64,000 bases of DNA from Macrostomum lignano (taxonomy: Eukaryota), in NCBI GenBank assembly GCA_002269645.1, contig NIVC01001558.1:204374-268373 (forward strand), in the 5' to 3' direction. The notes under the pieces are model-generated. The model saw only the letters and a program-made list of their open reading frames with translations. It was not told the origin of the DNA and searched no databases. Made by a program: the position numbers and the translations under genes. The stretch's first letter is position 1, and the number at the start of each line of letters is the position of its first letter. Shown piece after piece: positions 39,601-56,100 of the stretch.

Positions 39601-42600
39601 GACGAGGCCTTCCACTCCAGAATCCAGATTGAGCTGGAGATTCTGGCCAACTGCTCATCGCCTTACATTATCGCCTATCTGGGCGCTTTCTTTGTGGAAA
39701 ACACCATTCACGTGTGCACAGACTGGATGGATGGCGGGTCTTTGGACAAGTACGGCCGGCTGCCGGAGCAGATTCTCGGTGAGTGTGGGTCCGCATCCCA
39801 CAACTGACAGTCCCCATTCCACAGCTGACAGTCCCCATCCCAAAACTGACAGTCCCCATCCCACAGCTGACAGTCCCCATTCCACAACTGACAGTCCCCA
39901 TTCCACAACTGAGAGTCCCCATTCCACAGCTGGCAGTCCCCATTCCACAACTGACAGTCCCCATTCCACAGCTGACAGTCCTCATCCCACAACTGAGAGT
40001 CCGCATCCCACAACTGAGAGTCCTCATCTCACAGCTGGCAGTCCCCATTCCACAACTGACAGTCCCCATCCCACAACTGAGAGTCCCCATTCCACAGCTG
40101 GCAGTCCCCATTCCACAACTGACAGTCCCCATTCCACAACTGAGAGTCCCCATCCCACAACTGACAGTCCCCATCCCACAACCGACAGTCCCCATTCCAC
40201 AACCGACAGTCCCCATTCCACAACCGACAGTCCCCATTCCACAACCGACAGTCCCCATTCCACAACTGACAGTCCCCATTCCAGAGCTGACAATCACCAT
40301 CTAAAGTCTAGATTCCGCAGCTAAACCAATACCAATTTACACAGGTTTCGTCTGTCGCTGCGTTGTTGACGGCCTTCGCTACCTGTGGGGCAAGGGCGTC
40401 ATGCACAGAGACGTGAAGACCGCCAACATCCTTGTGAATAGTGCCGGCGATGTGAAACTGTGCGACTTCGGCCTGGCAATCCAGCTGAAGAGCTCCATCG
40501 CCCTGTCCTACTGCGGCACCAGCGCCTACATGTCCCCTGAGCGCATCATGGGCATGGAGTACAGAGTCCATTCCGACGTTTGGAGTCTGGGCATCACCCT
40601 ATTTGAGCTGGCCACGGGCTCGCTGCCCTTCCCGGTTGGCCAGGGTCTGTCTGGCCCGATGCTCATTGCGCAGGCTGTAGTTGGAGGGCCGGCGCCCCGT
40701 TTATCGGCCGCGGAGTTCTCTGCTGACCTGATACAGTTTGTAGATGCCTGGTGAGCCATCCGCAGTTGGCAGCTCCGGCCTTGTGCTCCTCTGCCCCTAT
40801 GTTGGCTGTCATTCCATCTGCTCCCCAGTTGAGACTGCCATTCCCGCCTTGGTCCTCAGGAGAAGTGCCACTCCCGCCTTGGTCCTCAGGAGAAGTGCCA
40901 CTCCCGCCTTGGTCCTCAGGGAAAGTGCCATTCCCGCCTTGGTCCTCAGGGGAAGTGCCACTCCCGCCTTGGTCCTCAGGAGAAGTGCCACTCCCGCCTT
41001 GGTCCTCAGGGAAAGTGCCATTCCCGCCTTGGTCCTCAGGGAAAGTGCCACTCCCGCCTTGGTCCTCAGGAGAAGTGCCACTCCCGCCTTGGTCCTCAGG
41101 GAAAGTGCCATTCCCGCCTTGGTCCTCAGGGGAAGTGCCACTCCCGCCCTAGGTCCTCAGGTTAAAGTGCCACTCCCGCCTTGGTCCTCAGGAGAAGTGC
41201 CACTCCCGCCTTGGTCCTCAGGGAAAGTGCCACTCCCGCCTTGGTCCTCAGGAGAAGTGCCACTCCCGCCTTGGTCCTCAGGGAAAGTGCCACTCCCGCC
41301 TTGGTCCTCAGGGGAAGTGCCACTCCCGCCCTAGGGTCCTCAGGTTAAAGTGCCACTCCCGCCTTGGTCCTCAGGGAAAGTGCCACTCCCGCCTTGGTCC
41401 TCAGGGGAAGTGCCACTCCCGCCCTAGGGTCCTCAGGTTAAAGTGCCACTCCCGCCTTGGTCCTCAGGTTAAAGTGCCACTCCCGCCTTGGTCCTCAGGG
41501 AAAGTGCCACTCCCGCCTTGGTCCTCAGGGGAAGTGCCATTCCCGCCTTGGTCCTCAGGGGAAGTGCCATTCCCGCCTTGGTCCTCAGGAGAAGTGCCAC
41601 TCCCGCCTTGGTCCTCAGGAGAAGTGCCACTCCCGCCTTGGTCCTCAGGAGAAGTGCCATTCCCGCCTTGGTCCTCAGGGAAAGTGCCACTCCCGCCTTG
41701 GTCCTCAGGGGAAGTGCCATTCCCGCCTTGGTCCTCAGGGAAAGTGCCACTCCCGCCTTGGTCCTCAGGAGAAGTGCCACTCCCGCCTTGGTCCTCAGGA
41801 GAAGTGCCACTCCCGCCTTGGTCCTCAGGAGAAGTGCCTTTCCCGCCTCGGTCCTCAGGTGAAACTGCCATTCCCATCTGATCCGCAGGTAAAACTGCCA
41901 TTCCCATCTGATCCTGAGGTGAAACTGGCGATTCCCATCTGGTCCTGAGGTGAAACTGGCCATTCCCATCTGGTCCTGAGGTGAAACTGGCCATTCCCAT
42001 CTGGTCCTTAGGTGAAACTGACCATTCCCATCTGGTCCTGAGGTGAAACTGGCCATTCCCATCTGGTCCTGAGGTGAAACTGGCCATTCCCATCTGGTCC
42101 TTAGGTGAAACTGACCATTCCCATCTGGTCCTGAGGTGAAACTGGCCATTCCCATCTGGTCCTGAGGTGAAACTGGCCATTCCCATCTGGTCCTGAGGTG
42201 AAACTGACCATTCCCATCTGGTCCTGAGGTGAAACTGGCCATTCCCATCTGGTCCTGAGGTGAAACTGGCCATTCCCATCTGGTCCTGAGGTGAAACTGA
42301 CCATTCCCATCTGGTCCTGAGGTGAAACTGGCCATTCCCATCTGGTCCTTAGGTGAAACTGACCATTCCCATCTGGTCCTTAGGTGAAACTGACCATTCC
42401 CATCTGGTCCTGAGGTGAAACTGGCCATTCCCATCTGGTCCTGAGGTGAAACTGGCCATTCCCATCTGGTCCTGAGGTGAAACTGGCCATTCCCATCTGG
42501 TCCTTAGGTGAAACTGACCATTCCCATCTGGTCCTGAGGTGAAACTGGCCATTCCCATCTGGTCCTGAGGTGAAACTGACCATTCCCATCTGGTCCTGAG

Positions 42601-42889
42601 GTGAAGCTACCGTTCCTTTCTGGTCCTGAGGTTCCATTCTGTATTGTAAAACAAATCATCGCGTGTGATAGGATTGCTTGATTTTGATAAACATCGGCCT
42701 GACATGTCAGCTGATTATTGCCAAAACCAATGCAGCCTACAGAAAGAACCGGAGAGGCGGCCCAGCCCAGTGTCTATAGTTGGCATGCGGTTCTACACTC
42801 TGTACTCTGGCGACCAGCGCGACCCGCTGTCTCGCTGGCTGCGGTCCAAGCAGTCTGAAATGCTGCGAGCTGCTGCCGCTGCTTCTTGA
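36615..42889 (+). CDS. MAP2K5: Dual-specificity MAP kinase kinase 5 (MEK5)
   Basis: Exons 36615-36742, 37326-37563, 39430-39778, 40345-40750 and 42736-42889 splice in frame. PB1 acidic motif CEDEDGDLVTVRDD; GRGQFG, HRDVK, DFG; activation loop SSIALSYCGT; MDGGSL. Confidence 0.92.
36800..37255 (+). mobile_element. Old SINE-B copy with a nested family-A SINE (36911-37180), MAP2K5 intron 1
   Basis: The A copy is flanked by a ~23-bp near-duplication GAGCGTGTG(TG/CA)TGAGTGCGTGCC. Confidence 0.8.
37572..39205 (+). repeat. 44-bp intronic minisatellite (~37 units), MAP2K5 intron 2
   Basis: Unit TTTTC(A/T)AGTTAAAACAAGCTGTAGGAAGCGCTGTTAGATTCTCA. Confidence 0.98.
39790..40290 (+). repeat. 21-bp intronic minisatellite (~24 units), MAP2K5 intron 3
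   Basis: Unit CCACAACTGACAGTCCCCATT. Confidence 0.97.
40830..42630 (+). repeat. Bipartite 30-bp/31-bp intronic minisatellite, MAP2K5 intron 4
   Basis: 30-bp unit ACTCCCGCCTTGGTCCTCAGGAGAAGTGCC to ~41860, then the 31-bp unit ATTCCCATCTGGTCCTGAGGTGAAACTGGCC. Confidence 0.97.
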
Positions 42890-43624: not shown

Positions 43625-43638
43625 GTTTCCATGGTAAC
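43625..43638. promoter_or_regulatory. RFX X-box GTTTCCATGGTAAC upstream of ANKS3
   Basis: Matches the X-box consensus GTHNYYATRRNAAC and lies ~120 bp upstream of the ATG at 43760 of a ciliary gene. Confidence 0.7.
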
Positions 43639-43759
43639 CATAAGAAGCATTCTGACCATTCCGCAGCCGGGGCCAGCGCTGCAAAGCTCGGCCAATTCCG
43701 ACTCGGGAATTGGGGGCTGCGGAGGGACGGCCAGGTCACGTGACACTGCCACATCCAGG

Positions 43760-45805
43760 ATGCAGGACGGACAGCAGCCGCCGTACTGGACGGTGGAGAA
43801 CGAAGTCTGCCTCAGCGAGCCAATGGACGCCTGCACCGCTGCCAGCTTGGGTGATTGTGAGTATCTAGACCAGGCCGTGACGGATGGCCGGCTGCCTGCG
43901 GCCGCTCTGGGCAAAGCGAACAGAAGCGGCTGGACTCCTCTGATGTACGCAGCTTACTTGGGTCACGACAGTCTGGTGAGTGTGACTCCCTTTTATGAAT
44001 CGTGGCTAAAGGTTCAAAGCTCCATCAGAGAGACTCATTGGGATTTAGGGATTTATTGGGATTACAAGCCGTAGGCCCAAAGGCAAAGGGATTCTTTTTT
44101 TCTAGAAATTCCTTTTGCGCGGCACATCGAGGGCTGCGTACGGCTGTTCAGTCCAAGGACTGGGGGTCGCCACACACACCCTCAATTACCCCAGCTAATA
44201 CTGACACCCATTTTACAGCTGGGGGTGAACTGAAGCAATGCAGAGTTAAGTGTCTTGCTCAAGGACGCAAATTGTTCCAGTGGGATCGGGAATCGAACCC
44301 CGGCCTTTCAGTCGTGAGTCCGACGCTCTAATCACTAGGCTACAACCCTTAATGCAATGTATATATCAATGTAACAGTTATACCCTCCAGAGCACTGTGG
44401 CCTTGACTTTCTCATTGCCAGGCATGTATAAACTGTGCCATGAAGGTTAGCTCTCGAGCTTCCATGCTTAAAAAAAGTCAGTTGTATATTAGAAGATTCT
44501 CAGATATTCCCTATGCCCAACTTTCGCATTAAAGGTGAAGCTGCTGCTAGAAAAGTACGGCACTCATGTGGGCGACACCGCGGACAAACGGCGGCGCACA
44601 GCTCTGATGCTGGCCTGCAGCTGCGGTCATCGAAGCGCTGTGACTATTTTAGCAACCGCTTCCTACTCCGGCCCAGATCCCGACCCGATAGATTCAGACG
44701 GGCACAATGCCGCCATGCACTGCGTTCTGTTTGGCCAGCGCGACTGCTTGGAGGACCTGCTGCTGTGCTGGCAGCGGAAGCGCTCGCTGTGCGGATTGCT
44801 GCATCTGCGCCAGGCTGTACTGGGCGGGCACACGGCCACCACGCAGCTACTGTTGGAGAAGCTGTTCTGCGGTGAACTGTTAGAATTAGCCGGCTTTTCA
44901 ATCAATCAGCAGCCGGCCAGCATTGAAGCCGTGTTTTCTGAGCTGAAGCTGAACAAATATGCTCACCTGTTTGAGGGAATGCCGATGCAAGACTTTCTGC
45001 AGCTTACGGAAGAGCAGGTTATTAATGCTTGTTAACTGGTCTTTTGATGAAGCGTCACTTCTCCCGGTTCAAAGGATAGAGCGATATTTTCCTCGGGTCG
45101 TTTGATTTAGCACCGCTACCTCTCATGGATCCTTTAATGTAACGCCGCTACCCCTATCCCGGATCCTTTGATGTAACGCCGCTACCCCTATCCCGGATCC
45201 TTTGATATAGCGCCGCTACCCCTATCCCGGATCCTTTGATGTAGCCTACCCCTATCCCGGATCCTTTGATGTAGTGCCACCACCCCTATCCGGGATCCTT
45301 TGATGTAGTGCCACCACCCCTATCCGGGATCCTTTGATGTAGTGCCGCTAGCCATATTTTCGATGCCACTGTCGCATCGAGTTTACTTTCCATGAACGTC
45401 TGTTTCTAATGGGATGAAATAGATTCTATGCGAGACTCTGAAACAATGAGAATTTAAATTTGTTTATTTCCAACTCCCTCACAGATAGTGGCTAGAGGCC
45501 TGACGCTAATCGGGCCCAAGCGTAAACTAGTGAACCATCTTACCCAGCTGAGGGCCAATCAGCCCGCGCCTACACCGGCTGTTGAGGCTGAGCAACCGCA
45601 ACCGCGCCAAGCGTCAAGCGCTGACAGGGCAGACAGCATCCAGCAGGCTAAAGATTGCGTAAAACTATTAGAAGACATTTGCATCAATCTAACCGATGAG
45701 CTTGGCAAAAGTACTCAACCGGCTAATGTGCAAATTTGGTTGCATAAGCTAAGGAAGAAGACTGTTGAGCTGCAGACTCATTTGGAACGGGTGTCAAACA
45801 CTTAA
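43760..45805 (+). CDS. ANKS3: Ankyrin repeat and SAM domain protein 3
   Basis: Exons 43760-43975, 44535-45017 and 45485-45805. Ankyrin GWTPLMYAAYLGHD and TALMLACSCG; SAM ..GLTLIGPKRK; C-terminal helical region. The start could be further upstream (frame open from 43631). Confidence 0.85.
44116..44348 (-). mobile_element. CORE-type tRNA-SINE family A (ANKS3 intron 1)
   Basis: Reverse complement of the family-A head and CORE. Confidence 0.88.
45125..45350 (+). repeat. 34-bp intronic minisatellite (~7 units), ANKS3 intron 2
   Basis: Unit GGATCCTTTGATGTAACGCCGCTACCCCTATCCC. Confidence 0.93.
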
Positions 45806-46367
45806 TGCTGCACCTACGTCTATAATTGATAACTGGAGTTGCCCATAGCTGTAATTATTTTGCTTAGCATGTTTAATCACTGATCTCCCTGTTGCATCTT
45901 AGATGTCTGGTGCTTTCCTTGGACTGTTTCTAGATGGTCTCCACTAACTGAAGCGTCTAACGCTTGTTAAACAGCTTTGCCCTGCATGTATCGCATTTTT
46001 TTAGTGCGTCAGTGTTAGATCAACCTCTATATTCTCATGTGCATCTGCACCTGTAATGCCAATATATAGCGCCAGTATTTTCAATTCCAATCCCCGCTAC
46101 TTTTGCTATTTTTAAATCTGTTTTTATCATGTTATGCCTACAGATACCTGAATAACTAACTAGATATGTCACACGCAAAAATGCCTTCATTCACTCTTTT
46201 CAGTAGCAAAATTAGCGTTGGTTGCGTGGATATCTGGCTTTTTACAAGCAAACCCATTCATTAAATTAGCATCCGTTTGAAACTGCACCCAAATCCAGTG
46301 CGTGTGCATAACTAGCAAAAAAGAAAAAAGGCGTGGACCAGACAGGCAGATAAACAGTTTGGCTGAC

Positions 46368-46655
46368 CTCTCTCCTTACTGTTCTCTCATTGGCTGAGCT
46401 AGATTGGGCCTGCCCCTAGGCAGAGTTTCGTCCGTCTGAATTTGATCTCTCTCCTTACTGCTCTCTCATTGGCTGAGCTAGATTGGGCCTGCCCCTAGGC
46501 AGAGTTTCGTCCGTCTGAATTTGATCTCTCTCCTTACTGCTCTCTCATTGGCTGAGCTAGATTGGGCCTGCCCCTAGGCAGAGTTTCGTCCGTCTGAATT
46601 TGACTTCTTTTCTCGCTGTTCGCTCATTGGCTGAGCTAGATTGGGCCTGCTCATG
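46368..46655 (+). repeat. 79-bp tandem repeat (~3.6 units) with two ATTGG (CCAAT) boxes per unit
   Basis: TCTCCTTACT starts at 46371, 46450 and 46529. Each unit contains CATTGGCTGAGCTAGATTGGGC. Confidence 0.9.
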
Positions 46656-47262
46656 TAGACTGCATTTTGTCCGTCTTGCGTTCACTTGTGTTCATCGAGT
46701 TAATGCTTGACACGATCCACGAACCCCGAGGAAGGAAATGAAATTTTAGCTGCAGCATTAAATTTAGCTGACACAGCGCAATAAACTACTGAAAACAAAG
46801 AATTAGGCGCTCTACTTTTTTTACAAATTTAATTGCGAGTGACATGTCTAGTTATCCTACCTAGTATCATCTCTGGTTCTACCTAGCTAATTGAATATCT
46901 GTCGAATTTTTCCCAGGTAAAGAACTTTACAATGCTTCTAGGTAGATCTGGGTGGCTGAATGTGCTTGTAGTGTTTATATTTTACTGCACATACGAGCTA
47001 AAATACTTTATGCGCTGTTGTCACCGTACACATGGCTGTTTACAATGTCGTAAGCTGAAGTATTATCCGAAGCTTTAGCTATTCTGCTGCTAAAATTATA
47101 TACATCTGCTCTACTGGAAGGACTTGTAGTCCGTGTCAGATTATAATGAGCTATTTTTTATTGGCATTGATTTCGTTCAGTTTACAGTTGTAAATATATG
47201 TTACTTTGCTTGTTGCTAGGGCTAAAAAACTTGCCTAACCACCAATAGTTTGTTCCTTGCAG

Positions 47263-48039
47263 TCAACTAACGGCGCAGGCGGTCAGCTTCGCGAGCCCGA
47301 ATGGCTGGTGAGGCTGCAGGCGGTGTCCCGGGGCTATTTGTTTCGGCGCCGACTCAACGATGCTAACCGGTACTACTTTGAGCTGGCCTGCGAGGCTGAC
47401 GGCGACGTCAGGGCTGCCGCCGCTGTCGCCGCTGCCGGCTGTCGCCAGTGGACTTCCCAATGGCAGCGTCAGAAAAAAGCTGAAGCGCAGGCTAAACTAG
47501 AAGCTGAAGCGCAGGCTAAACTAGAGGCTGAAGCGCAGGCTAAACTAGAGGCTGAAGCGCAGGCTAAACTAGAGGCTGAAGCGCAGGCTAAACTAGAAGC
47601 TGAAGCGCAGGCTAAACTAGAGGCTGAAGCGCAGGCTAAACTAGAAGCTGAAGCGCAGGCTAAACTAGAAGCTCAAGCTAAACTAGAAGCTGAAGCGCAG
47701 GCTAAACTAGAGGCTAAAGCGCAGGCTAAACTAGAGGCTGAAGCGCAGGCTAAACTAGAGGCTGAAGCGCAGGCTGACCTGGAGGCAGAAGCGGATGTCA
47801 AACTCGATGCCAGCACTCAGTACGACCCGGGCATTGCGGAAGTCGCAACAGAGACAGGCCAGCGAAAAGATGTTGACGCGGAAGTTGATGAAGAAAGCGT
47901 GAGCTGTTTAGACGAGTCGGCTCTATCCGGGTTGCGACAGCAGCTGCACTGGGAGCTGGTGTGGCTGGACCAGGCCATCGCCAGTAGGCGCCACTTCTTG
48001 CGCTTCCGCCGGCTGGCTGGCCAGGCTGGGCAGCAGTAG
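47263..48039 (+). CDS. IQCC: IQ domain-containing protein C-like; no in-frame Met in the exon
   Basis: IQ motif LQAVSRGYLFRR and C-terminal ELVWLDQAIASRR..L, both as in IQCC. Acceptor TTTGTTCCTTGCAG at 47249-47262. Internal (AKLEAEAQ)n repeat. Confidence 0.75.
   Translation, partial: STNGAGGQLREPEWLVRLQAVSRGYLFRRRLNDANRYYFELACEADGDVRAAAAVAAAGCRQWTSQWQRQKKAEAQAKLEAEAQAKLEAEAQAKLEAEAQAKLEAEAQAKLEAEAQAKLEAEAQAKLEAEAQAKLEAQAKLEAEAQAKLEAKAQAKLEAEAQAKLEAEAQADLEAEADVKLDASTQYDPGIAEVATETGQRKDVDAEVDEESVSCLDESALSGLRQQLHWELVWLDQAIASRRHFLRFRRLAGQAGQQ
47479..47790 (+). repeat. 24-bp coding tandem repeat (~12-13 units) within IQCC
   Basis: Unit GCTGAAGCGCAGGCTAAACTAGA(A/G). Confidence 0.95.
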
Positions 48040-48861
48040 CAGCTCTGCGCAACTTCCCAATTATACGCAGTTTGTTTTACTGCTTTTGCCCTGATATTTT
48101 CGTATTTTGGATATTTCTGCGCAGGCCGCAGCTTGAGTTATGCGATACTCGTACTCTACTGAGTGTAAATATATATATCTTTTCTGCTTGTTATTTTTCA
48201 TCCGGATGTGTCAATAAACACGGCATAGCTTAACTTTTGAATTTCAACTTTTAGATTGATAATAACATGTTTCTCCGACTTTATGTTATGTTAAAGAGAT
48301 AGAAAACGAACTAAAGTAGGTTGAATATACGAGAGGCTTTGTCCGGAAAGCTCAGACACTCTAAAGTCAAGAGCAGAAACACGGTTCTTCTCGTATATTT
48401 TGGTCATGCTTTAAAAGCAAATTTAAGCTTCTGCCGCAACCTCCGCACTTCCCAGTTATCACGGCAGCCGGTTTCTTTCCCGCAATTTATGCCCCAACAG
48501 GGGTCATTTAGAGGACAAAGGTCAGGCGCAGTCTCTTCCAGGGTCTTTCAAGGCAGTGCTTTTTTGATGCGATTGACGTGAGGGATGCTCAAGCGATGGG
48601 AGAGAAGTTTGTCGCTACAGGTGGAGAGTGAGACCGAGTTGAAAGACAACAATTTGATTCTTAAAGACGAATAATCGCTTTTTATATTGCTTGTTACTTT
48701 CACTGCAACTATCTGTTGTTTTTCCAAGCATAACTTTTTGTATGGAATGACCAAAATATGCGAGCTTGAAGCGTCAGAACTTTTCCGGACAGTTGTTATC
48801 AACAGACAATGAAAATATAATTCATGCCCGTAACTCGCAACTGCCTATCAGCGATCACGTG

Positions 48862-49778
48862 ATGCCGCTTGACCGCTACCGCAATACAGCCTTGGTTGAT
48901 GGCATCGATGTGCGCGCCCTGCCGCTGGCTGGCGACTGCCCGGCCCCAGCTAGCGAAGGCAAACAGCAGCAGCAGCAGCAGCAGCAGCACTGGTTTCAGC
49001 GCCGTCTAGTCCAAGACACTGTCGGGTCCGGCTATGTAGAATTTGGCGACACCAAAGTCCTGTGCTCAGTGCACGGCCCAATGGAGCCCAAGCGGTCTGT
49101 ATTGACTGATGCAGGCGCTGAGCAGTCTCGAGCCCAGCTGCAGGTGTATTACAAATTGGCACCATTTGCCTCTCATCAAGCTGGCCGAGTTTCTTACCTG
49201 CCCGACGAAACTGAGAGACGCGCGGCCAGCTTTCTACAGGTGAGATCTTTATTCTTGATTGGAATTTTACTTTGCACTCTTTACTCTATAAGTCTCTATC
49301 GTAATTGTGTGCTCAAATATTAACCGACTTTACTCAGGACACTCTGGCACCATCGCTGCGGCTGGATCGGCTGCCCAAGTCGCGCATCGAGCTGCACTGC
49401 TTGGTGCTGGAGGACGCCGGCTGTTGCCTAGCAACCGCCGTTAATTGCGCCTGCCTAGCTCTGGTGGATGCCGGCCTAGAGATGTACGACTTGGTTACAG
49501 CGGCCACTGTCTGCCGGCCTGTTGGCGCCACCGACTGGCAGCTGGAGGTCGGCGACGGCTCGAACAGCGGCGGCAGCAGCTCGGTGACTCTGGCCTACAT
49601 GCGCAGCCTGCGCCAGGTGGCCGGCATGCTGGTTGAGGCTGCCGAGCCGCTGCAGCCCAGAGAGGTCAGTGCCGCATGCCGGATTTGCGAGGATCCGTGC
49701 AAGATGACGCACAGCAGTCTGCGCCAGTTTCTGCTGGACTGCCTGCCGGCTGACGACAGGACGGCAAAGATTGCGTAA
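48862..49778 (+). CDS. EXOSC6: Exosome complex component MTR3 (RNase PH fold)
   Basis: Exons 48862-49239 and 49338-49778. Motifs GSGYVEFGDTKVLCSVHGP, LAPFA, LPKSRIELHCLVLEDAG and LALVDAGLEMYDLV. Confidence 0.88.
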
Positions 49779-50125
49779 TCTTTGAATGCCCAATGACAGT
49801 CTGGCTTTTGCATTTCTGCTATGCACTCATAGTATGCCAATGCGTACTGTTGCTAAATAGGGTCACCGTAGACTTTAAAAGGAAGATATGACCCTCTTTG
49901 TCGCATTGACAGTTGATGGGCATAAATAAACATTGCAACAATATTTATAGTTTCTTTGCATGAATTTTTTGCCTTAATAAATTGGAAATTTTTTCTTTAT
50001 TTAAGTATTTTTGCCTGTATTGTGAATATCTGGGTTTAAGTTGATTTTATTCTTCGAAATTGCTTTGCTGCTTATTTGGCATTCTAAGCTCTTCTCACTG
50101 ACTGGTTCGCGATAAATCACAGCGC

Positions 50126-53100
50126 ATGTCCGCCACGGAGCCGCCAGAGGAGCAGGCGCACGATGTTCTGCCAGGTAGCCGCGACTCTGGCCAGGCAGGC
50201 GGCCTCGTTGTGCGCAGCGGCGCCGGCGCCCGCCCGCTGGCTAACACCGAGGCCACAGGCGGCCTGGCCGCTGGCGGCATCCAGTTCAAGAAGCCAGCCG
50301 ACCGTCAGCCGCCACCGCAGTCCTCGCGGCCGTCGCTGCTCGGATTGGACAAGCTGGCGGCCCGGAAGCGCGAGGAAGCCGCCGCCGCAGCAGCAGCTGG
50401 CCCGGCCGCTAAAAAGTACCGCGAGCTGCGCCCAGAAACGCCAGCCTCGCAGCGGTCCGATATCGCCGACATCCCGCGCCCGGAGCTGAAGGCGCCGCGC
50501 CGGCAGGAGCGCGGGATCGTTGCTGCCAGATCCTCTTCTGGCGGCGGCGGCGGCGGCGGCGGCGGCAGCCGCTCGGAACGGAGGCGCCGCTACGACGAGT
50601 GGGAGCGAGACACGTCCACGCGCCGGGAGGCGGACGATTCGGGCTCGCCCTACTACCGGACCCCAAAGCATCTGAGCGCCAATGAGGCGACTCCATCGCG
50701 TGAGAATTGGGATGTCGAAAGCAGGGCCGGCGAAGGCGGCAGAGGCTCATTCGAATACACCCCGATGCCAACGCCGACTTACAAGCGCGACTACCGCAGT
50801 CGGGATCGTCGGAGAGGTACCGACAGCATTGCCGGCAGCGAGCGTCGGCGAGATCAGCTTGATAACGAAGACTGGGAGCAGGAGCAGAAGCGGCTCGACA
50901 GGTAAATAATCATTGATTCAAGCGATACCGTGACAAGCATAGCTAAAAAGACGTTGCAAATAACTCTATAGTGACTCTAGCGACTCTTGTGACTTTTAAC
51001 GACACAAAAGCGTCTAATCAGACGAAGAGGCGATTGTTGCGACACAAGCGCGTCACGTCAGTTGTAGAATCGTGAAAGTGTCGGTCCAGAATCGTTATAC
51101 TGTCTCCCCAGAGTCACTAGAGTCGCCCCAAAGTCACTAGAGTCGCCCCAGAGTCACTAGAGCCGCCTCAGAGTCACTAGAGCCGCCCCAAAGTCACTAG
51201 AGTCGCCCCAGAGTCACTAGAGTCGCCTCAGAGTCACTAGAGTCGCCTCAGAGTCACTAGAGTCGCCCCAGAGTCACTAGAGCCGCCTCAGAGTCACTAG
51301 AGCCGCCCCAGAGTCACTAGAGTCGGCCCAGAGTCACTAGAGTCGCCCCAGAGTCACTAGAGTCGCCCCAGAGTCACTAGAGTCGCCCCAGAGTCACTAG
51401 AGTCGCCCCAGAGTCACTAGAGTCGCCCCAGAGTCACTAGAGTCGCCCCAGAGTCACTAGAGTCGCCCCAGAGTCACTACAGTTGCCCCAGAGTCACTAG
51501 AGTCGCCCGCCCCAGAGTCACTAGAGTCGCCCCAGAGTCACTAGAGTCGCCCCAGAGTCACTAGAGTCGCCCCAGAGTCACTAGAGTCGCCTCAGAGTCA
51601 CTAGAGTCGCCTCAGAGTCACTAGAGCCGCCTCAGAGTCACTAGAGCCGCCCCAGAGTCACTAGAGTCGGCCCAGAGTCACTAGAGTCGCCCCAGAGTCA
51701 CTAGAGTCGCCCCAGAGTCACTAGAGTCGCCCCAGAGTCACTAGAGTCGCCCCAGAGTCACTAGAGTTGCCCCAGAGTCACTAGAGTCGCCCAGAGTCAC
51801 TAGAGTCGCCCCAGAGTCACTACAGTTGCCCCAGAGTCACTAGAGTCGCCCGCCCCAGAGTCACTAGAGTCGCCCCAGAGTCACTAGAGTCGCCCCAGAG
51901 TCACTAGAGTCGCCCCAGAGTCACTAGAGTCGCCCCAGAGTCACTAGAGTCGCCTCAGAGTCACTAGAGTCGCCTCAGAGTCACTAGAGTCGCCCCAGAG
52001 TCACTAGAGCCGCCTCAGAGTCACTAGAGCCGCCCCAGAGTCACTAGAGTCGGCCCAGAGTCACTAGAGTCGCCCCAGAGTCACTAGAGTCGCCCCAGAG
52101 TCACTAGAGTCGCCCCAGAGTCACTAGAGTCGCCCCAGAGTCACTAGAGTTGCCCCAGAGTCACTAGAGTCGCCCAGAGTCACTAGAGTCGCCCCAGAGT
52201 CACTACAGTTGCCCCAGAGTCACTAGAGTCGCCCGCCCCAGAGTCACTAGAGTCGCCCCAGAGTCACTAGAGTCGCCCCAGAGTCACTAGAGTCGCCCCA
52301 GAGTCACTAGAGTCGCCTCAGAGTCACTAGAGTCGCCTCAGAGTCACTAGAGCCGCCTCAGAGTCACTAGAGCCGCCCCAGAGTCACTAGAGTCGGCCCA
52401 GAGTCACTAGAGTCGCCCCAGAGTCACTAGAGTCGCCCCAGAGTCACTAGAGTCGCCCCAGAGTCACTAGAGTTGCCCCAGAGTCACTAGAGTCGCCCAG
52501 AGTCACTAGAGTCGCCCCAGAGTCACTACAGTTGCCCCAGAGTCACTAGAGTCGCCCGCCCCAGAGTCACTAGAGTCGCCCCAGAGTCACTAGAGTCGCC
52601 CCAGAGTCACTAGAGTCGCCCCAGAGTCACTAGAGTCGCCTCAGAGTCACTAGAGTCGCCCCAGAGACACTAGAGTCGCCCCAGAGTCACTAGAGTCGGC
52701 CCAGAGTCACTAGAGTCGGCCCAGAGTCACTAGAGTCGCCCCAGAGTCACTAGAGTCGGCCCAGAGTCACTAGAGTCGCCCCAGAGACACTAGAGTCGCC
52801 CCAGAGTCACTAGAGTCGCCCCAGAGTCACTAGAGTCGCCCCAGAGTCACTAGAGTTGCCCCAGAGTCACTAGAGTCGCCCAGAGTCACTAGAGTCGCCC
52901 CAGAGTCACTACAGTTGCCCCAGAGTCACTAGAGTCGCCCGCCCCAGAGTCACTAGAGTCGCCCCAGAGTCACTAGAGTCGCCCCAGAGTCACTAGAGTC
53001 GCCCCAGAGTCACTAGAGTCGCCCCAGAGTCACTAGAGTCGCCTCAGAGTCACTAGAGTCGCCTCAGAGTCACTAGAGTCGCCCCAGAGTCACTAGAGCC

Positions 53101-56100
53101 GCCTCAGAGTCACTAGAGCCGCCCCAGAGTCACTAGAGTCGGCCCAGAGTCACTAGAGTCGCCCCAGAGTCACTAGAGTCGCCCCAGAGTCACTAGAGTC
53201 GCCCCAGAGTCACTAGAGTCGCCCCAGAGTCACTAGAGTTGCCCCAGAGTCACTAGAGTCGCCCAGAGTCACTAGAGTCGCCCCAGAGTCACTACAGTTG
53301 CCCCAGAGTCACTAGAGTCGCCCGCCCCAGAGTCACTAGAGTCGCCCCAGAGTCACTAGAGTCGCCCCAGAGTCACTAGAGTCGCCCCAGAGTCACTAGA
53401 GTCGCCCCAGAGTCACTAGAGTCGCCCCAGAGTCACTAGAGTCGCCCCAGAGTCACTAGAGTCGCCCCAGAGTCACTAGAGTCGCCCCAGAGTCACTAGA
53501 GTCGCCCCAGAGTCACTAGAGTCGCCCCAGAGTCACTAGAGTCGCCCCAGAGTCACTAGAGTCGCCCGCCCCAGAGTCACTAGAGTCGCCCCAGAGTCAC
53601 TAGAGTCGCCCCAGAGTCACTAGAGTCGCCCCAGAGTCACTAGAGTCGCCCCAGAGTCACTAGAGTCGCCCCAGAGTCACTAGAGTCGCCCCAGAGTCAC
53701 TAGAGTCGCCCCAGAGTCACTAGAGTCGCCCCAGAGTCACTAGAGTCGCCCCAGAGTCACTAGAGTCGCCCCAGAGTCACTAGAGTCGCCCCAGAGTCAC
53801 TAGAGTCGCCCCAGAGTCACTAGAGTCGCCCCAGAGTCACTAGAGTCGCCCCAGAGTCACTAGAGGCGCCCCAGAGTCACTAGAGTCGCCCCAGAGACAC
53901 TAGAGTCGCCCCAGAGTCACTAGAGTCGCCTCAGAGTCACTAGAGTCGCCCCAGAGACACTAGAGTCGCCCCAGAGTCACTAGAGTCGGCCCAGAGTCAC
54001 TAGAGTCGGCCCAGAGTCACTAGAGTCGCCCCAGAGTCACTAGAGTCGCCCCAGAGTCACTAGAGTCGCCCCAGAGACACTAGAGTCGCCCCAGAGTCAC
54101 TAGAGTCGCCCCAGAGACACTAGAGTCGCCCCAGAGTCACTAGAGTCGCCCCAGAGTCACTAGAGTCGCCCCAGAGTCACTAGAGTCGCCCCAGAGTCAC
54201 TAGAGTCGCCCCAGAGTCACAGTCACAAAGACGCTTAAAAGTGCTTTTTGGGTGATTAACGACTTTTTGGCAATTTTTACCGTGACTTTTCATCGTTTTA
54301 GAGTCGTTTAGAGTCATTTATTTTCTATTTTACTCGTGCCTACCGGTATGTCATCTGCAATGACTCTGAAACGACTGGGACGCTTCTTGCCCTAGGTACC
54401 GTTTTTATCGGTGATAGCCTGATTCCAATGCAGCTGGATTTCCGGATTTGCTAATTTGCCCGCAGGCAGTGGTACCAAATGGACGAGGGCTTCGACGACG
54501 AGAATAATCCATTCCCGGACGTGTCGCAGGAATACGTTGAGAAGCGCGAGCGGGAATTGCGCAAACAGCAGCAACAGCAGCGCAAGTGTCGCTCGGCGGC
54601 GGCGCAGCAGACTCAGAAGGACAACGTGGCCTGGGAGGAGAACCGAATGCTCCGATCGGGCGTGGTGCAAAAGACTCAGCTGGATGAGGATCTTGTAAGT
54701 GATTCATAGTCAAGCGCCAATGACAAGCCAGATTCATAGTTAAGCGCCAATGACAAGCCAGATTTATAGTTAAACACCAATGACAAGCCAGATTCATAAT
54801 TAGGCGCCAATGACAAGCCAGATTCATAGTCAAGCGCCAATGACAAGCCAGATTCATAGTCAAGCGCCAATGACAAGCCAGATTCATAGTCAAGCGCCAA
54901 TGACAAGCCAGATTCATAGTTAAGCGCCAATGACAAGCCAGATTCATAGTCAAGCGCCAATGACAAGCCAGATTCATAGTCAAGCGCCAATGACAAGCCA
55001 GATTCATAGTTAAGCGCCAATGACAAGCCAGATTCATAGTCAAGCGCCAATGACAAGCCAGATTCATAGTCAAGCGCCAATGACAAGCCAGATTCATAGT
55101 CAAGCGCCAATGACAAGCCAGATTCATAGTCAAGCACCAATGACAAGCCAGATTCATAGTCAAGCGCCAATGACAAGCCAGATTCATAGTCAAGCGCCAA
55201 TGACAAGCCAGATTCATAGTTAAGCGCCAATGACAAGCCAGATTTATAGTTAAACACCAATGACAAGCCAGATTCATAGTCAAGCGCCAATGACAAGCCA
55301 GATTCATAGTCAAGCGCCAATGACAAGCCAGATTCATAGTTAGGCGCCAATGACAAGCCAGATTCATAGTTAGGCGCCAATGACAAGCCAGATTCATAAT
55401 TAGGCGCCAATGACAAGCCAGATTCATAGTCAAGCGCCAATGACAAGCCAGATTCATAGTTAAGCGCCAATGACAAGCCAGATTTATAGTTAAACACCAA
55501 TGACAAGCCAGATTCATAATTAGGCGCCAATGACAAGCCAGATTCATAGTCAAGCGCCAATGACAAGCCGGATTCATAGTTAGGCGCCAATGACAAGCCA
55601 GATTCATAGTTAAGCGCCAATGACAAGCCAGATTTATAGTTAAACACCAATGACAAGCCAGATTCATAATTAGGCGCCAATGGCAAGCCAGATTCATAGT
55701 CAAGCGCCAATGACAAGCCGGATTCAGAGTTAGGCGCCAATGACAAGCCAGATTCATAGTTAAGCGCCAATAACCGAACTTCAGGACGATGAAATCGGCG
55801 CCCGCGTGCACCTGTTGGTGCGCAACATTGTGCCGCCCTTCCTGGACGGCCGTATCGTGTTCACCAGGCAGCCGGAGCCGGTCGTCCCCGTGCGCGACCC
55901 CACCAGCGACATGGCCATGGTGTGCAAGAACGGCTCGGCGCTTGTCCGGTCTTGGCGCGAGCAGCGCGAACGACGCCGAGCTCAAAAGAAGGAGTGGCAG
56001 CTGGCCGGCACCAGAATTGGCGACATCATGGGCGTCAAGCGGCCTGAGGAAGCCGAGCGCGAGGAGCACCTTGGCGGTGATGAAGGCGGCGACGGCCGTT

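What the first reader, a model, noticed from the sequence alone, without database searches (positions are those of the whole stretch)
47230..48039. IQCC ORF has no methionine: start codon possibly supplied by the spliced leader
The ~258-codon exon encodes the whole IQCC architecture yet contains no Met. It begins at a textbook acceptor (branch CCTAAC ~47234, TTTGTTCCTTGCAG|TCA) in phase 0. The three nearest upstream donor-like sites (46917, 46942, 47050) give no in-frame ATG. Flatworm SL exons are known to end in AUG that can initiate translation (shown in Schistosoma). SL addition here would give M-STNGAGG..., with the IQ motif near the N-terminus as in other IQCCs. This depends on the host being a flatworm.
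Basis: partly seen in the sequence, partly recalled or inferred. Interest (0 to 1): 0.72.

Follow-up and report, generated by a model that had tools for sequence, protein, structure and literature searches.

The report
Flatworm gene borrowing its start codon
A conserved IQCC-like gene of the flatworm Macrostomum lignano has no ATG of its own and most likely takes its start codon from the trans-spliced leader, a mechanism already known in flatworms, so this is a clean new example and not a new kind of thing.

Summary
The window is the last 64 kb of Macrostomum lignano contig NIVC01001558.1 (100% identity). The ORF at 47263-48039 has 258 codons and no Met. An in-frame TAA lies 9 codons upstream, and the ORF begins in phase 0 right after TTTGTTCCTTGCAG. 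It has the IQCC layout: an N-terminal IQ motif and a C-terminal ELLWxQQAIxSR motif. GenBank lists it and two paralogs as 'partial'. One paralog's CDS starts exactly at the first base after the acceptor.

The M. lignano spliced leader (SL, 35 nt) ends in ATG. The published trans-acceptor motif [T/C]TNCAG fits (TTGCAG). The gene carries the same transcriptional-unit name as the two genes downstream. SL addition would give M-STNGAGG... in frame, from the only in-frame AUG of that mRNA.

One supporting claim is wrong. The donor at 47050 (GTC|GTAAGC) is the only consensus donor in the 1.4-kb intergenic region, and it has an in-frame ATG at 47032 (MAVYNV). A cis-spliced mini-exon remains a real rival.

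SL-supplied initiator AUGs are established for Schistosoma and acknowledged for Macrostomum, so interest is modest.

The parts
47234..47239 (+). Putative branch site CCTAAC. It contains the in-frame stop TAA (47236-47238) that closes the ORF upstream.
   Evidence: Sequence read directly. The branch function is inferred only.
47249..47262 (+). Polypyrimidine tract and 3' splice acceptor TTTGTTCCTTGCAG. Proposed SL trans-splice acceptor.
   Evidence: TTGCAG fits the M. lignano trans-acceptor motif [T/C]TNCAG (PMC8629364). The paralog CDS (PAA60234.1) starts at the next base.
47263..48039 (+). Single coding exon of the IQCC-like gene BOX15_Mlig006780g2: 258 codons without Met, plus TAG.
   Evidence: GenBank PAA66443.1 'partial'.
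47314..47355 (+). IQ motif LQAVSRGYLFRRRL (residues 18-31).
   Evidence: Pfam IQ is weak (E=0.03). Q19, A20, R23, G24, L26, R28 and L31 (numbered in P0004) are invariant in the alignment with IQCC relatives. Coordinates.
47479..47793 (+). In-frame tandem repeat, 24 nt x 13.4 copies (EAEAQAKL).
   Evidence: The array contains no GT, so the 210-nt 'intron' implied by the GenBank CDS cannot be a canonical GT-AG intron.
47932..48015 (+). C-terminal IQCC signature LRQQLHWELVWLDQAIASRRHFLRFRRL.
48213..48218 (+). AATAAA, the likely poly(A) signal of the IQCC-like mRNA.
   Evidence: It is the only AATAAA/ATTAAA between the stop codon and the next gene.
47032..47049 (+). Rival element: possible cis-spliced mini-exon coding end, ATG GCT GTT TAC AAT GTC (MAVYNV), in phase 0 with the acceptor.
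47050..47055 (+). Rival element: donor GTAAGC, the only GT[AG]AG in 45806-47235. The intron would be 47050-47262 (213 nt).

Best explanation
The IQCC-like gene of Macrostomum lignano (BOX15_Mlig006780g2) is a single-exon gene in a same-strand, operon-like gene row. Its pre-mRNA is SL trans-spliced at TTTGTTCCTTGCAG|TCA (47262|47263). The 35-nt leader CGGTCTCTTACTGCGAAGACTCAATTTATTGCATG supplies the cap, the whole 5' UTR and, with its last three bases, the initiator AUG. Translation then reads M-STNGAGGQLREPEWLVRLQAVSRGYLF... through 258 genomic codons.

Shown here: the host identity, the ORF with no Met, the acceptor and its phase, the in-frame join, and the IQCC homology.

Taken from the literature: the SL sequence, the trans-acceptor motif, the way the annotation pipeline sets 5' ends, and the use of the flatworm SL AUG as an initiator.

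Inferred: that this particular acceptor receives the SL, and that ribosomes start at the SL AUG on this mRNA.
For: 1. The window equals NIVC01001558.1 of M. lignano at 100% identity over 20,768 nt. The protein is PAA66443.1.
2. The SL ends in ATG (PMC8629364). All reported flatworm SLs do (PMC12582326).
3. TTGCAG matches the trans-acceptor motif [T/C]TNCAG.
4. SL plus exon gives an uninterrupted ORF from the SL ATG at nt 33-35. There is no other in-frame ATG, and the out-of-frame ATGs give at most 46 codons.
5. All three paralog models are '5' partial'. The L001 CDS starts at the first base after AG. The 9-nt offset in the other two copies coincides with SNPs inside the first 9 nt.
6. The annotation pipeline trims the SL and cuts transcriptional units at SL-read peaks (PMC5730564).
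7. The gene is g2 of unit Mlig006780, with RNase PH as g3 and the helicase as g4. In a paralogous contig, g7-g10 are one unit that includes the upstream Ank-SAM gene.
8. The neighbouring Ank-SAM model also starts directly after a CAG acceptor.
9. In S. mansoni the SL AUG is in frame in 28% of trans-spliced mRNAs and is required by more than 40 cDNAs (Cheng 2006, as cited in PMC9851317). Wiberg 2023 calls the Macrostomum SL's final ATG a translation start codon (PMC10468722).
10. IQCC relatives carry only about 15-25 residues before the IQ motif. SL-Met gives 17.
Against: No read or cDNA with the SL|TCAACTAAC junction was seen. The tools hold no M. lignano RNA data, and two junction scans of metagenome contigs found nothing.

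A consensus donor at 47050 with an in-frame ATG at 47032 offers an ordinary cis-spliced start.

The pipeline's boundaries are not infallible. The RNase PH model starts just after a genomic mimic of the SL 3' end, with no AG present.

The SL AUG context is weak (U at -3, U at +4).

The paralogs are about 99% identical, so conservation cannot discriminate.
Confidence: 0.72

Rival explanations
1. The gene has an ordinary cis-spliced first exon. Transcription starts shortly upstream of 47032. ATG 47032 opens MAVYNV. The donor GTC|GTAAGC at 47050 is joined to the same acceptor by removal of a 213-nt intron, giving MAVYNVSTNGAGG.... This could be the sole route, or an isoform that shares the acceptor with SL trans-splicing.
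For: The donor at 47050 is the only GT[AG]AG in 45806-47235, and it is in phase 0 with an open ATG. Only 10 of 80 GT sites in that interval (12.5%) have this property. Parasitic flatworms share acceptors widely between cis- and trans-splicing (PMC12582326). A non-coding unit 'g1' (and g15 in L003) appears to lie upstream of the IQCC model; this is inferred from gene numbering.
Against: No public model contains MAVYNV. The searches found only the three 5'-partial proteins. One model starts exactly at the acceptor. Upstream ATGs at 47010, 46960 and 46932 would be out-of-frame uAUGs unless the transcription start lies within about 21 nt of 47032. A 12.5% coincidence is not rare.
Confidence: 0.15
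2. The mRNA starts at or near the acceptor without using an SL AUG, and is translated from a near-cognate codon (CTG 47305, GTG 47308, CTG 47314). Alternatively, it is not translated at all and the locus is a decaying gene copy.
For: In-frame CTG and GTG codons exist at codons 15, 16 and 18. The IQCC homology is weak (E=1.9e-3 in the database search).
Against: Those codons lie inside or just before the IQ motif, so initiation there would truncate it. Three copies keep a 258-codon open frame and all the invariant IQCC residues. An AUG supplied by the SL is the simpler route in this organism.
Confidence: 0.05
3. The exon is a downstream exon of a larger gene. For example, it could be cis-spliced from the phase-0 donor at 45018 of the upstream Ank-SAM gene, giving an Ank-IQCC fusion protein.
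For: Ank-SAM exons 1 and 2 are 309 and 483 nt, so the donor at 45018 is in phase 0 and would join 47263 in frame. In one paralogous contig the two genes share a transcriptional-unit name.
Against: The annotation separates the genes in all three copies. IQCC relatives are stand-alone proteins with the IQ motif near the N-terminus. AATAAA at 46780 lies between the two genes. Phase agreement is a 1-in-3 coincidence.
Confidence: 0.03

Closest known systems
Schistosoma mansoni mRNAs that use the SL 3'-terminal AUG as initiator methionine (Cheng, Cohen, Ndegwa and Davis, J Biol Chem 2006; read here only through PMC9851317 and PMC12582326)
   Same: It is a flatworm SL ending in AUG. The recipient ORF is in frame with that AUG and has no AUG of its own upstream of the conserved part. 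The SL provides the cap, the 5' UTR and the start codon.
   Different: The species and SL differ (a free-living macrostomid with a 35-nt SL). Here the whole 258-codon ORF lacks Met, not just its 5' part. Translation from the SL AUG is not shown for this gene.
slORFs: ORFs created by SL addition in nematodes, Oikopleura and trypanosomes (slORFfinder, PMC9851317)
   Same: The start codon is contributed by the leader and is therefore missed by genome-based annotation.
   Different: Those cases mostly use near-cognate NUG codons within the SL and often create alternative or overlapping ORFs. Here a true AUG would open the gene's main, conserved ORF.
Macrostomum genome annotation practice (Wiberg et al. 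2023, PMC10468722; Wudarski et al. 2017, PMC5730564)
   Same: The authors state that the SL likely contains the final ATG as a translation start codon. They kept it on reads to avoid annotation problems. The 2017 pipeline trimmed the SL, which explains 'partial' models such as this one.
   Different: Neither paper, in the passages my term searches returned, singles out this gene or counts genes that depend wholly on the SL AUG.
Vertebrate and invertebrate IQCC (IQ domain-containing protein C)
   Same: There is an N-terminal IQ motif about 20 residues from the start, a variable middle, and a C-terminal ELLW(L/V)QQAI(A)SRK-type motif. 19 columns are invariant in a six-protein alignment.
   Different: Overall identity is 22-32%. 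The middle region is replaced by an EAEAQAKL tandem repeat. The genomic copy has no start codon.

Membership tests
Flatworm genes whose initiator AUG is supplied by the spliced leader | The host has an SL RNA whose exon ends in AUG. | tested here: met
   The host was identified as M. lignano. The SL is CGGTCTCTTACTGCGAAGACTCAATTTATTGCATG (PMC8629364). No SL gene lies in the window itself, as expected for a trans-acting RNA.
Flatworm genes whose initiator AUG is supplied by the spliced leader | The SL is joined to the acceptor at the 5' end of the ORF exon, shown by SL-junction reads or cDNA. | not testable with these tools
   The evidence is indirect only. The acceptor fits [T/C]TNCAG. The 5'-partial CDS of a paralog starts at the first base after AG. 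The pipeline cuts at SL sites. Junction scans found nothing in a collection that does not hold the relevant data.
Flatworm genes whose initiator AUG is supplied by the spliced leader | The SL AUG is in frame with the conserved ORF, with no intervening stop. | tested here: met
   In-silico SL plus exon gives MSTNGAGGQLREPEWLVRLQAV....
Flatworm genes whose initiator AUG is supplied by the spliced leader | The mature trans-spliced mRNA has no other usable in-frame AUG. | tested here: met
   There is no Met in 258 codons, and the out-of-frame ATGs open at most 46 codons.
Flatworm genes whose initiator AUG is supplied by the spliced leader | No cis-spliced upstream exon provides an in-frame AUG. 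| tested here: inconclusive
   A candidate exists by sequence: ATG 47032 with the donor at 47050. It is absent from all public protein models found.
Flatworm genes whose initiator AUG is supplied by the spliced leader | Translation starts at the SL AUG (N-terminal peptide, ribosome profiling or a reporter). | not testable with these tools
   No proteomic or Ribo-seq data are accessible here.
IQCC (IQ domain-containing protein C) | An IQ motif lies near the N-terminus. | tested here: met
   The Pfam IQ hit is below its cut-off (E=0.03, residues 16-31). However, Q19, A20, R23, G24, L26, R28 and L31 are invariant against five IQCC relatives.
IQCC (IQ domain-containing protein C) | A C-terminal ELLWxQQAIxSR(K/R)xxL motif is present, collinear with the IQ motif. 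| tested here: met
   BLASTP against Crotalus IQCC gives E=1e-08 across both motifs. The invariant columns are E161, L162, W164, Q167, A168, I169, S171, R172 and L176.
IQCC (IQ domain-containing protein C) | Database searches recover IQCC proteins as the nearest non-self relatives. | tested here: met
   The only non-Macrostomum hit in the word-index search is named IQCC (E=1.9e-3). The exhaustive search returns seven proteins matching the C-terminal motif region (P0032, 34, 35, 44, 45, 50, 51; E 1e-5 to 1e-3), all with IQCC-type IQ and ELLW motifs. They sit among many hits to the repeat alone.
M. lignano operon / polycistronic transcriptional unit | Same-strand neighbours are assigned to one transcriptional unit, lie close together, and the downstream genes are SL trans-spliced. 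| tested here: inconclusive
   IQCC, RNase PH and the helicase are g2, g3 and g4 of Mlig006780; in a paralog, g7-g10 include Ank-SAM. CDS-to-CDS gaps are 789 and 347 nt. Trans-splicing of each gene was not observed directly.

The most novel reading that the evidence does not exclude
The acceptor at 47263 is used in two ways. SL trans-splicing and cis-splicing from the 47032-47049 mini-exon each deliver their own AUG in phase 0. The gene would then make two N-terminal isoforms (M-STNG... and MAVYNV-STNG...) from an exon with no Met codon of its own. The choice between its own promoter and operon/SL expression would decide which isoform is made. After removal of the initiator Met (the next residue is Ser), the SL form would be a protein with no methionine at all.
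Probability: 0.12. Interest if true: 0.45.

Novelty: new member of a known kind. Interest (0 to 1): 0.3.

Why it matters
It is an unusually clean case of a gene that cannot be translated into its conserved protein from genomic sequence alone, because the start codon lies in a trans-acting RNA.

In practice it explains why GenBank lists this gene and its paralogs as 'partial'. It also shows that SL-trimming pipelines systematically produce start-less models in Macrostomum.

Counting such ORFs (no Met, phase 0) would give a lower bound on obligate SL-dependent translation in a transgenic flatworm model, where the mechanism could be tested directly. It adds no new principle beyond what was shown for Schistosoma in 2006.

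Tried and rejected
- SL RNA gene in the window. There was no match to the SL 3' 21-mer with up to 3 mismatches and no Rfam family. The best local SL alignments (scores 20-25) fall within the range of shuffled-SL maxima (20-27). The SL therefore comes from elsewhere.
- Direct junction evidence. SL|exon and mini-exon|exon patterns were scanned in metagenome contigs, with 0 hits each. This is uninformative, because that collection holds no M. lignano RNA.
- Gene identifiers. Mlig006780 and Mlig016491 were not found in the paper library or in the supplements held.
- Papers. Wasik 2015 and Cheng 2006 are not held.
- Conservation among the three paralogous loci. They are about 99% identical in the exon, intron and intergenic DNA, so this does not discriminate.
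- Other acceptors. The AG at 47247-48 lies too close to the putative branch site, and by my frame arithmetic it is out of frame. By the same arithmetic, the AG at 47277-78 is out of frame. The AG at 47285-86 is in frame but has no pyrimidine tract (sequence).
- The 210-nt 'intron' in the GenBank CDS. It was rejected as real because the repeat array contains no GT.
- A fossil SL upstream of RNase PH. The similarity is too weak to be significant (score 11-16).
- Structure prediction was not run, because it would not bear on the start-codon question.

Full report
**What is in the sequence**

The + strand ORF from 47263 to the TAG at 48037-48039 has 258 sense codons and no ATG in frame. The frame is closed by TAA at 47236-47238, inside the putative branch site CCTAAC at 47234-47239. 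The exon is preceded by TTTGTTCCTTGCAG (47249-47262), so TCA at 47263 is codon position 1. The seven ATGs inside the exon are all out of frame and open ORFs of only 4-46 codons. A 24-nt tandem repeat (13.4 copies, EAEAQAKL) occupies 47479-47793. Outside the repeat there are 153 residues. At 1.5-2.5% Met, the chance that these contain none is about 2-10%. That is unusual but not remarkable by itself.

**Whose genome it is**

A protein search returned three near-identical GenBank proteins of Macrostomum lignano. All are flagged 'partial': PAA66443.1 (BOX15_Mlig006780g2), PAA60186.1 and PAA60234.1. The locus around PAA66443.1 matches window 37272-58039 at 100.000% identity over 20,768 nt. The window ends where contig NIVC01001558.1 of assembly GCA_002269645.1 (Mlig_3_7) ends.

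**What the protein is**

The only non-Macrostomum hit in the word-index search is a protein named IQ domain-containing protein C (E=1.9e-3). Pairwise BLASTP gives E=1e-08 and spans both ends of the protein. An exhaustive HMMER search returned many hits to the repeat alone. It also returned seven proteins that match the C-terminal region and have IQCC-type IQ and ELLW motifs. In a six-protein alignment the IQ motif (Q19, A20, R23, G24, L26, R28, L31) and the C-terminal motif (E161, L162, W164, Q167, A168, I169, S171, R172, L176) are invariant. The relatives carry about 15-25 residues before the IQ motif. The ORF is therefore an essentially complete IQCC-like protein that lacks only its start codon.

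**What is known about the leader**

- M. lignano has one 35-nt SL, CGGTCTCTTACTGCGAAGACTCAATTTATTGCATG. About 30% of its genes are trans-spliced, and the motif at trans-acceptors is [T/C]TNCAG (PMC8629364). The acceptor here reads TTGCAG.
- All reported flatworm SLs end in ATG (PMC12582326).
- In S. mansoni that AUG is in frame in 28% of trans-spliced mRNAs, and more than 40 cDNAs need it (Cheng et al. 2006, as cited in PMC9851317).
[quoted passage not shown] They left it on reads to avoid annotation problems (PMC10468722).

**Evidence that this acceptor takes the SL (indirect)**

- The Mlig_3_7 annotation trimmed SL sequences from transcripts and reads. It cut transcriptional units at SL-read peaks, and ORFs were then called with TransDecoder (PMC5730564).
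- In paralog L001 the 5'-partial CDS starts at the first base after the AG. Eight open codons lie upstream of the acceptor, so this means the transcript model begins within 3 nt of the acceptor.
- In the window's own copy and in L003 the CDS starts 9 nt later. The three copies differ from one another only inside those 9 nt: TCAACTAAC, TCAACTAGC and TCAAATAAC. I infer that a single SL-trimmed transcript was mapped to all three copies and lost its mismatched end on two of them.
- I rebuilt the neighbouring CDSs and looked them up. On this contig, IQCC, RNase PH and a DHX38-like helicase are g2, g3 and g4 of unit Mlig006780. In the L001 contig, Ank-SAM, IQCC, RNase PH and the helicase are g7-g10 of one unit. 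All are on the + strand with short spacers. This is the layout of an M. lignano polycistron, whose internal genes need the SL.
- The Ank-SAM model is also 5'-partial and starts directly after CATTCCGCAG (43667).
- Joining the SL to 47263 in silico gives MSTNGAGGQLREPEWLVRLQAV... from the leader's ATG.

I listed every GT between the Ank-SAM stop (45805) and the acceptor. For each, I asked whether an ATG reaches it in phase 0 without a stop. Ten of 80 do. Only one site in the interval matches the cis-donor consensus GT[AG]AG. That site is GTC|GTAAGC at 47050, and it is one of the ten. ATG 47032, GCT GTT TAC AAT GTC, then the donor. Splicing to 47263 reads MAVYNVSTNGAGG....

Points against this exon being the main route:
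- No public protein contains it.
- One model starts exactly at the acceptor.
- Out-of-frame ATGs at 47010, 46960 and 46932 would precede it unless transcription starts within about 21 nt of it.

A 12.5% coincidence is not rare, but the exon cannot be excluded. Flatworms often share acceptors between cis- and trans-splicing.

**A caution about the annotation**

The RNase PH model starts 2 nt after genomic AATATAAT(T/G)CATG. This sequence resembles the SL 3' end (11 of 13 positions in two paralogs), and there is no AG at that position. This boundary is probably a trimming artefact. The IQCC and Ank-SAM boundaries differ from it in that they sit on canonical acceptors.

**Other readings**

- Near-cognate initiation at CTG or GTG (codons 15-18) would cut into the IQ motif.
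- An in-frame Ank-IQCC fusion from the phase-0 donor at 45018 is formally possible, but nothing supports it.

**Verdict**

The SL-supplied start codon is the best explanation (about 0.72). The cis mini-exon is the main rival (about 0.15), alone or alongside the SL route. The mechanism is already established in flatworms and acknowledged for this genus. This is a new, tidy member of a known kind and a useful annotation fix, not a discovery of principle.

Noticed in passing
window 47479-47793 (and GenBank CDS 47272-48039): The GenBank protein has 185 aa, but the genomic ORF has 258 codons. The CDS span implies a 210-nt 'intron' inside the 24-nt repeat array, which contains no GT at all. The short protein is probably an artefact of mapping a repeat-collapsed transcript. 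The paralogs imply 192-nt gaps.
   Followed up: partly
window 43631-43675: The upstream Ank-SAM gene (PAA66442.1, 'partial', 370 aa) has its CDS starting at 43667, directly after CATTCCGCAG in phase 0. An in-frame genomic ATG at 43631 lies in what would be the outron, and the first in-frame Met after the acceptor is codon 32. An SL AUG would be in frame here too, so this is a second candidate in the same window.
   Followed up: partly
window 48814-48862: The RNase PH gene model (PAA66444.1, 'partial') starts at 48829. This is 2 nt after genomic AATATAATTCATG (AATATAATGCATG in two paralogs), which mimics the SL 3' end AATTTATTGCATG. There is no AG at that position, so it is probably a false SL-trim boundary. 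The real start is likely ATG 48862 (MPLDRY...).
   Followed up: partly
window 50112-50131: The helicase gene reads ATAAATCACAG|CGC ATG TCC. If the SL were added at this CAG, its AUG would be in frame two codons upstream of the annotated ATG at 50126 (M-R-M-S...). No evidence of trans-splicing here was examined.
   Followed up: no
window 47263-47271; L001 10001-10009; L003 9992-10000: The three paralogous copies differ at two positions within the first 9 nt of the exon (STN, STS, SNN), against about 1% divergence elsewhere. This coincides with the 9-nt shift of the annotated CDS start in two copies.
   Followed up: partly
window 40000-42632, 45094-45357, 46364-46650, 51102-54000 and beyond: There are large tandem arrays between and inside genes: 21-nt x14, 30-nt x34, 31-nt x25, 34-nt x8, 79-nt x3.6, and a 20-nt unit in about 144 copies inside the helicase gene span. 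They inflate the intergenic and intron distances of this operon-like row, as described for M. lignano operons.
   Followed up: no
window 37272-60278: Older UniProt models fuse neighbouring genes: an 808-aa 'MAP2K' that includes Ank-SAM, and a 1472-aa 'RNA helicase' whose length suggests RNase PH plus the helicase. This shows how polycistronic units mislead gene predictors.
   Followed up: no
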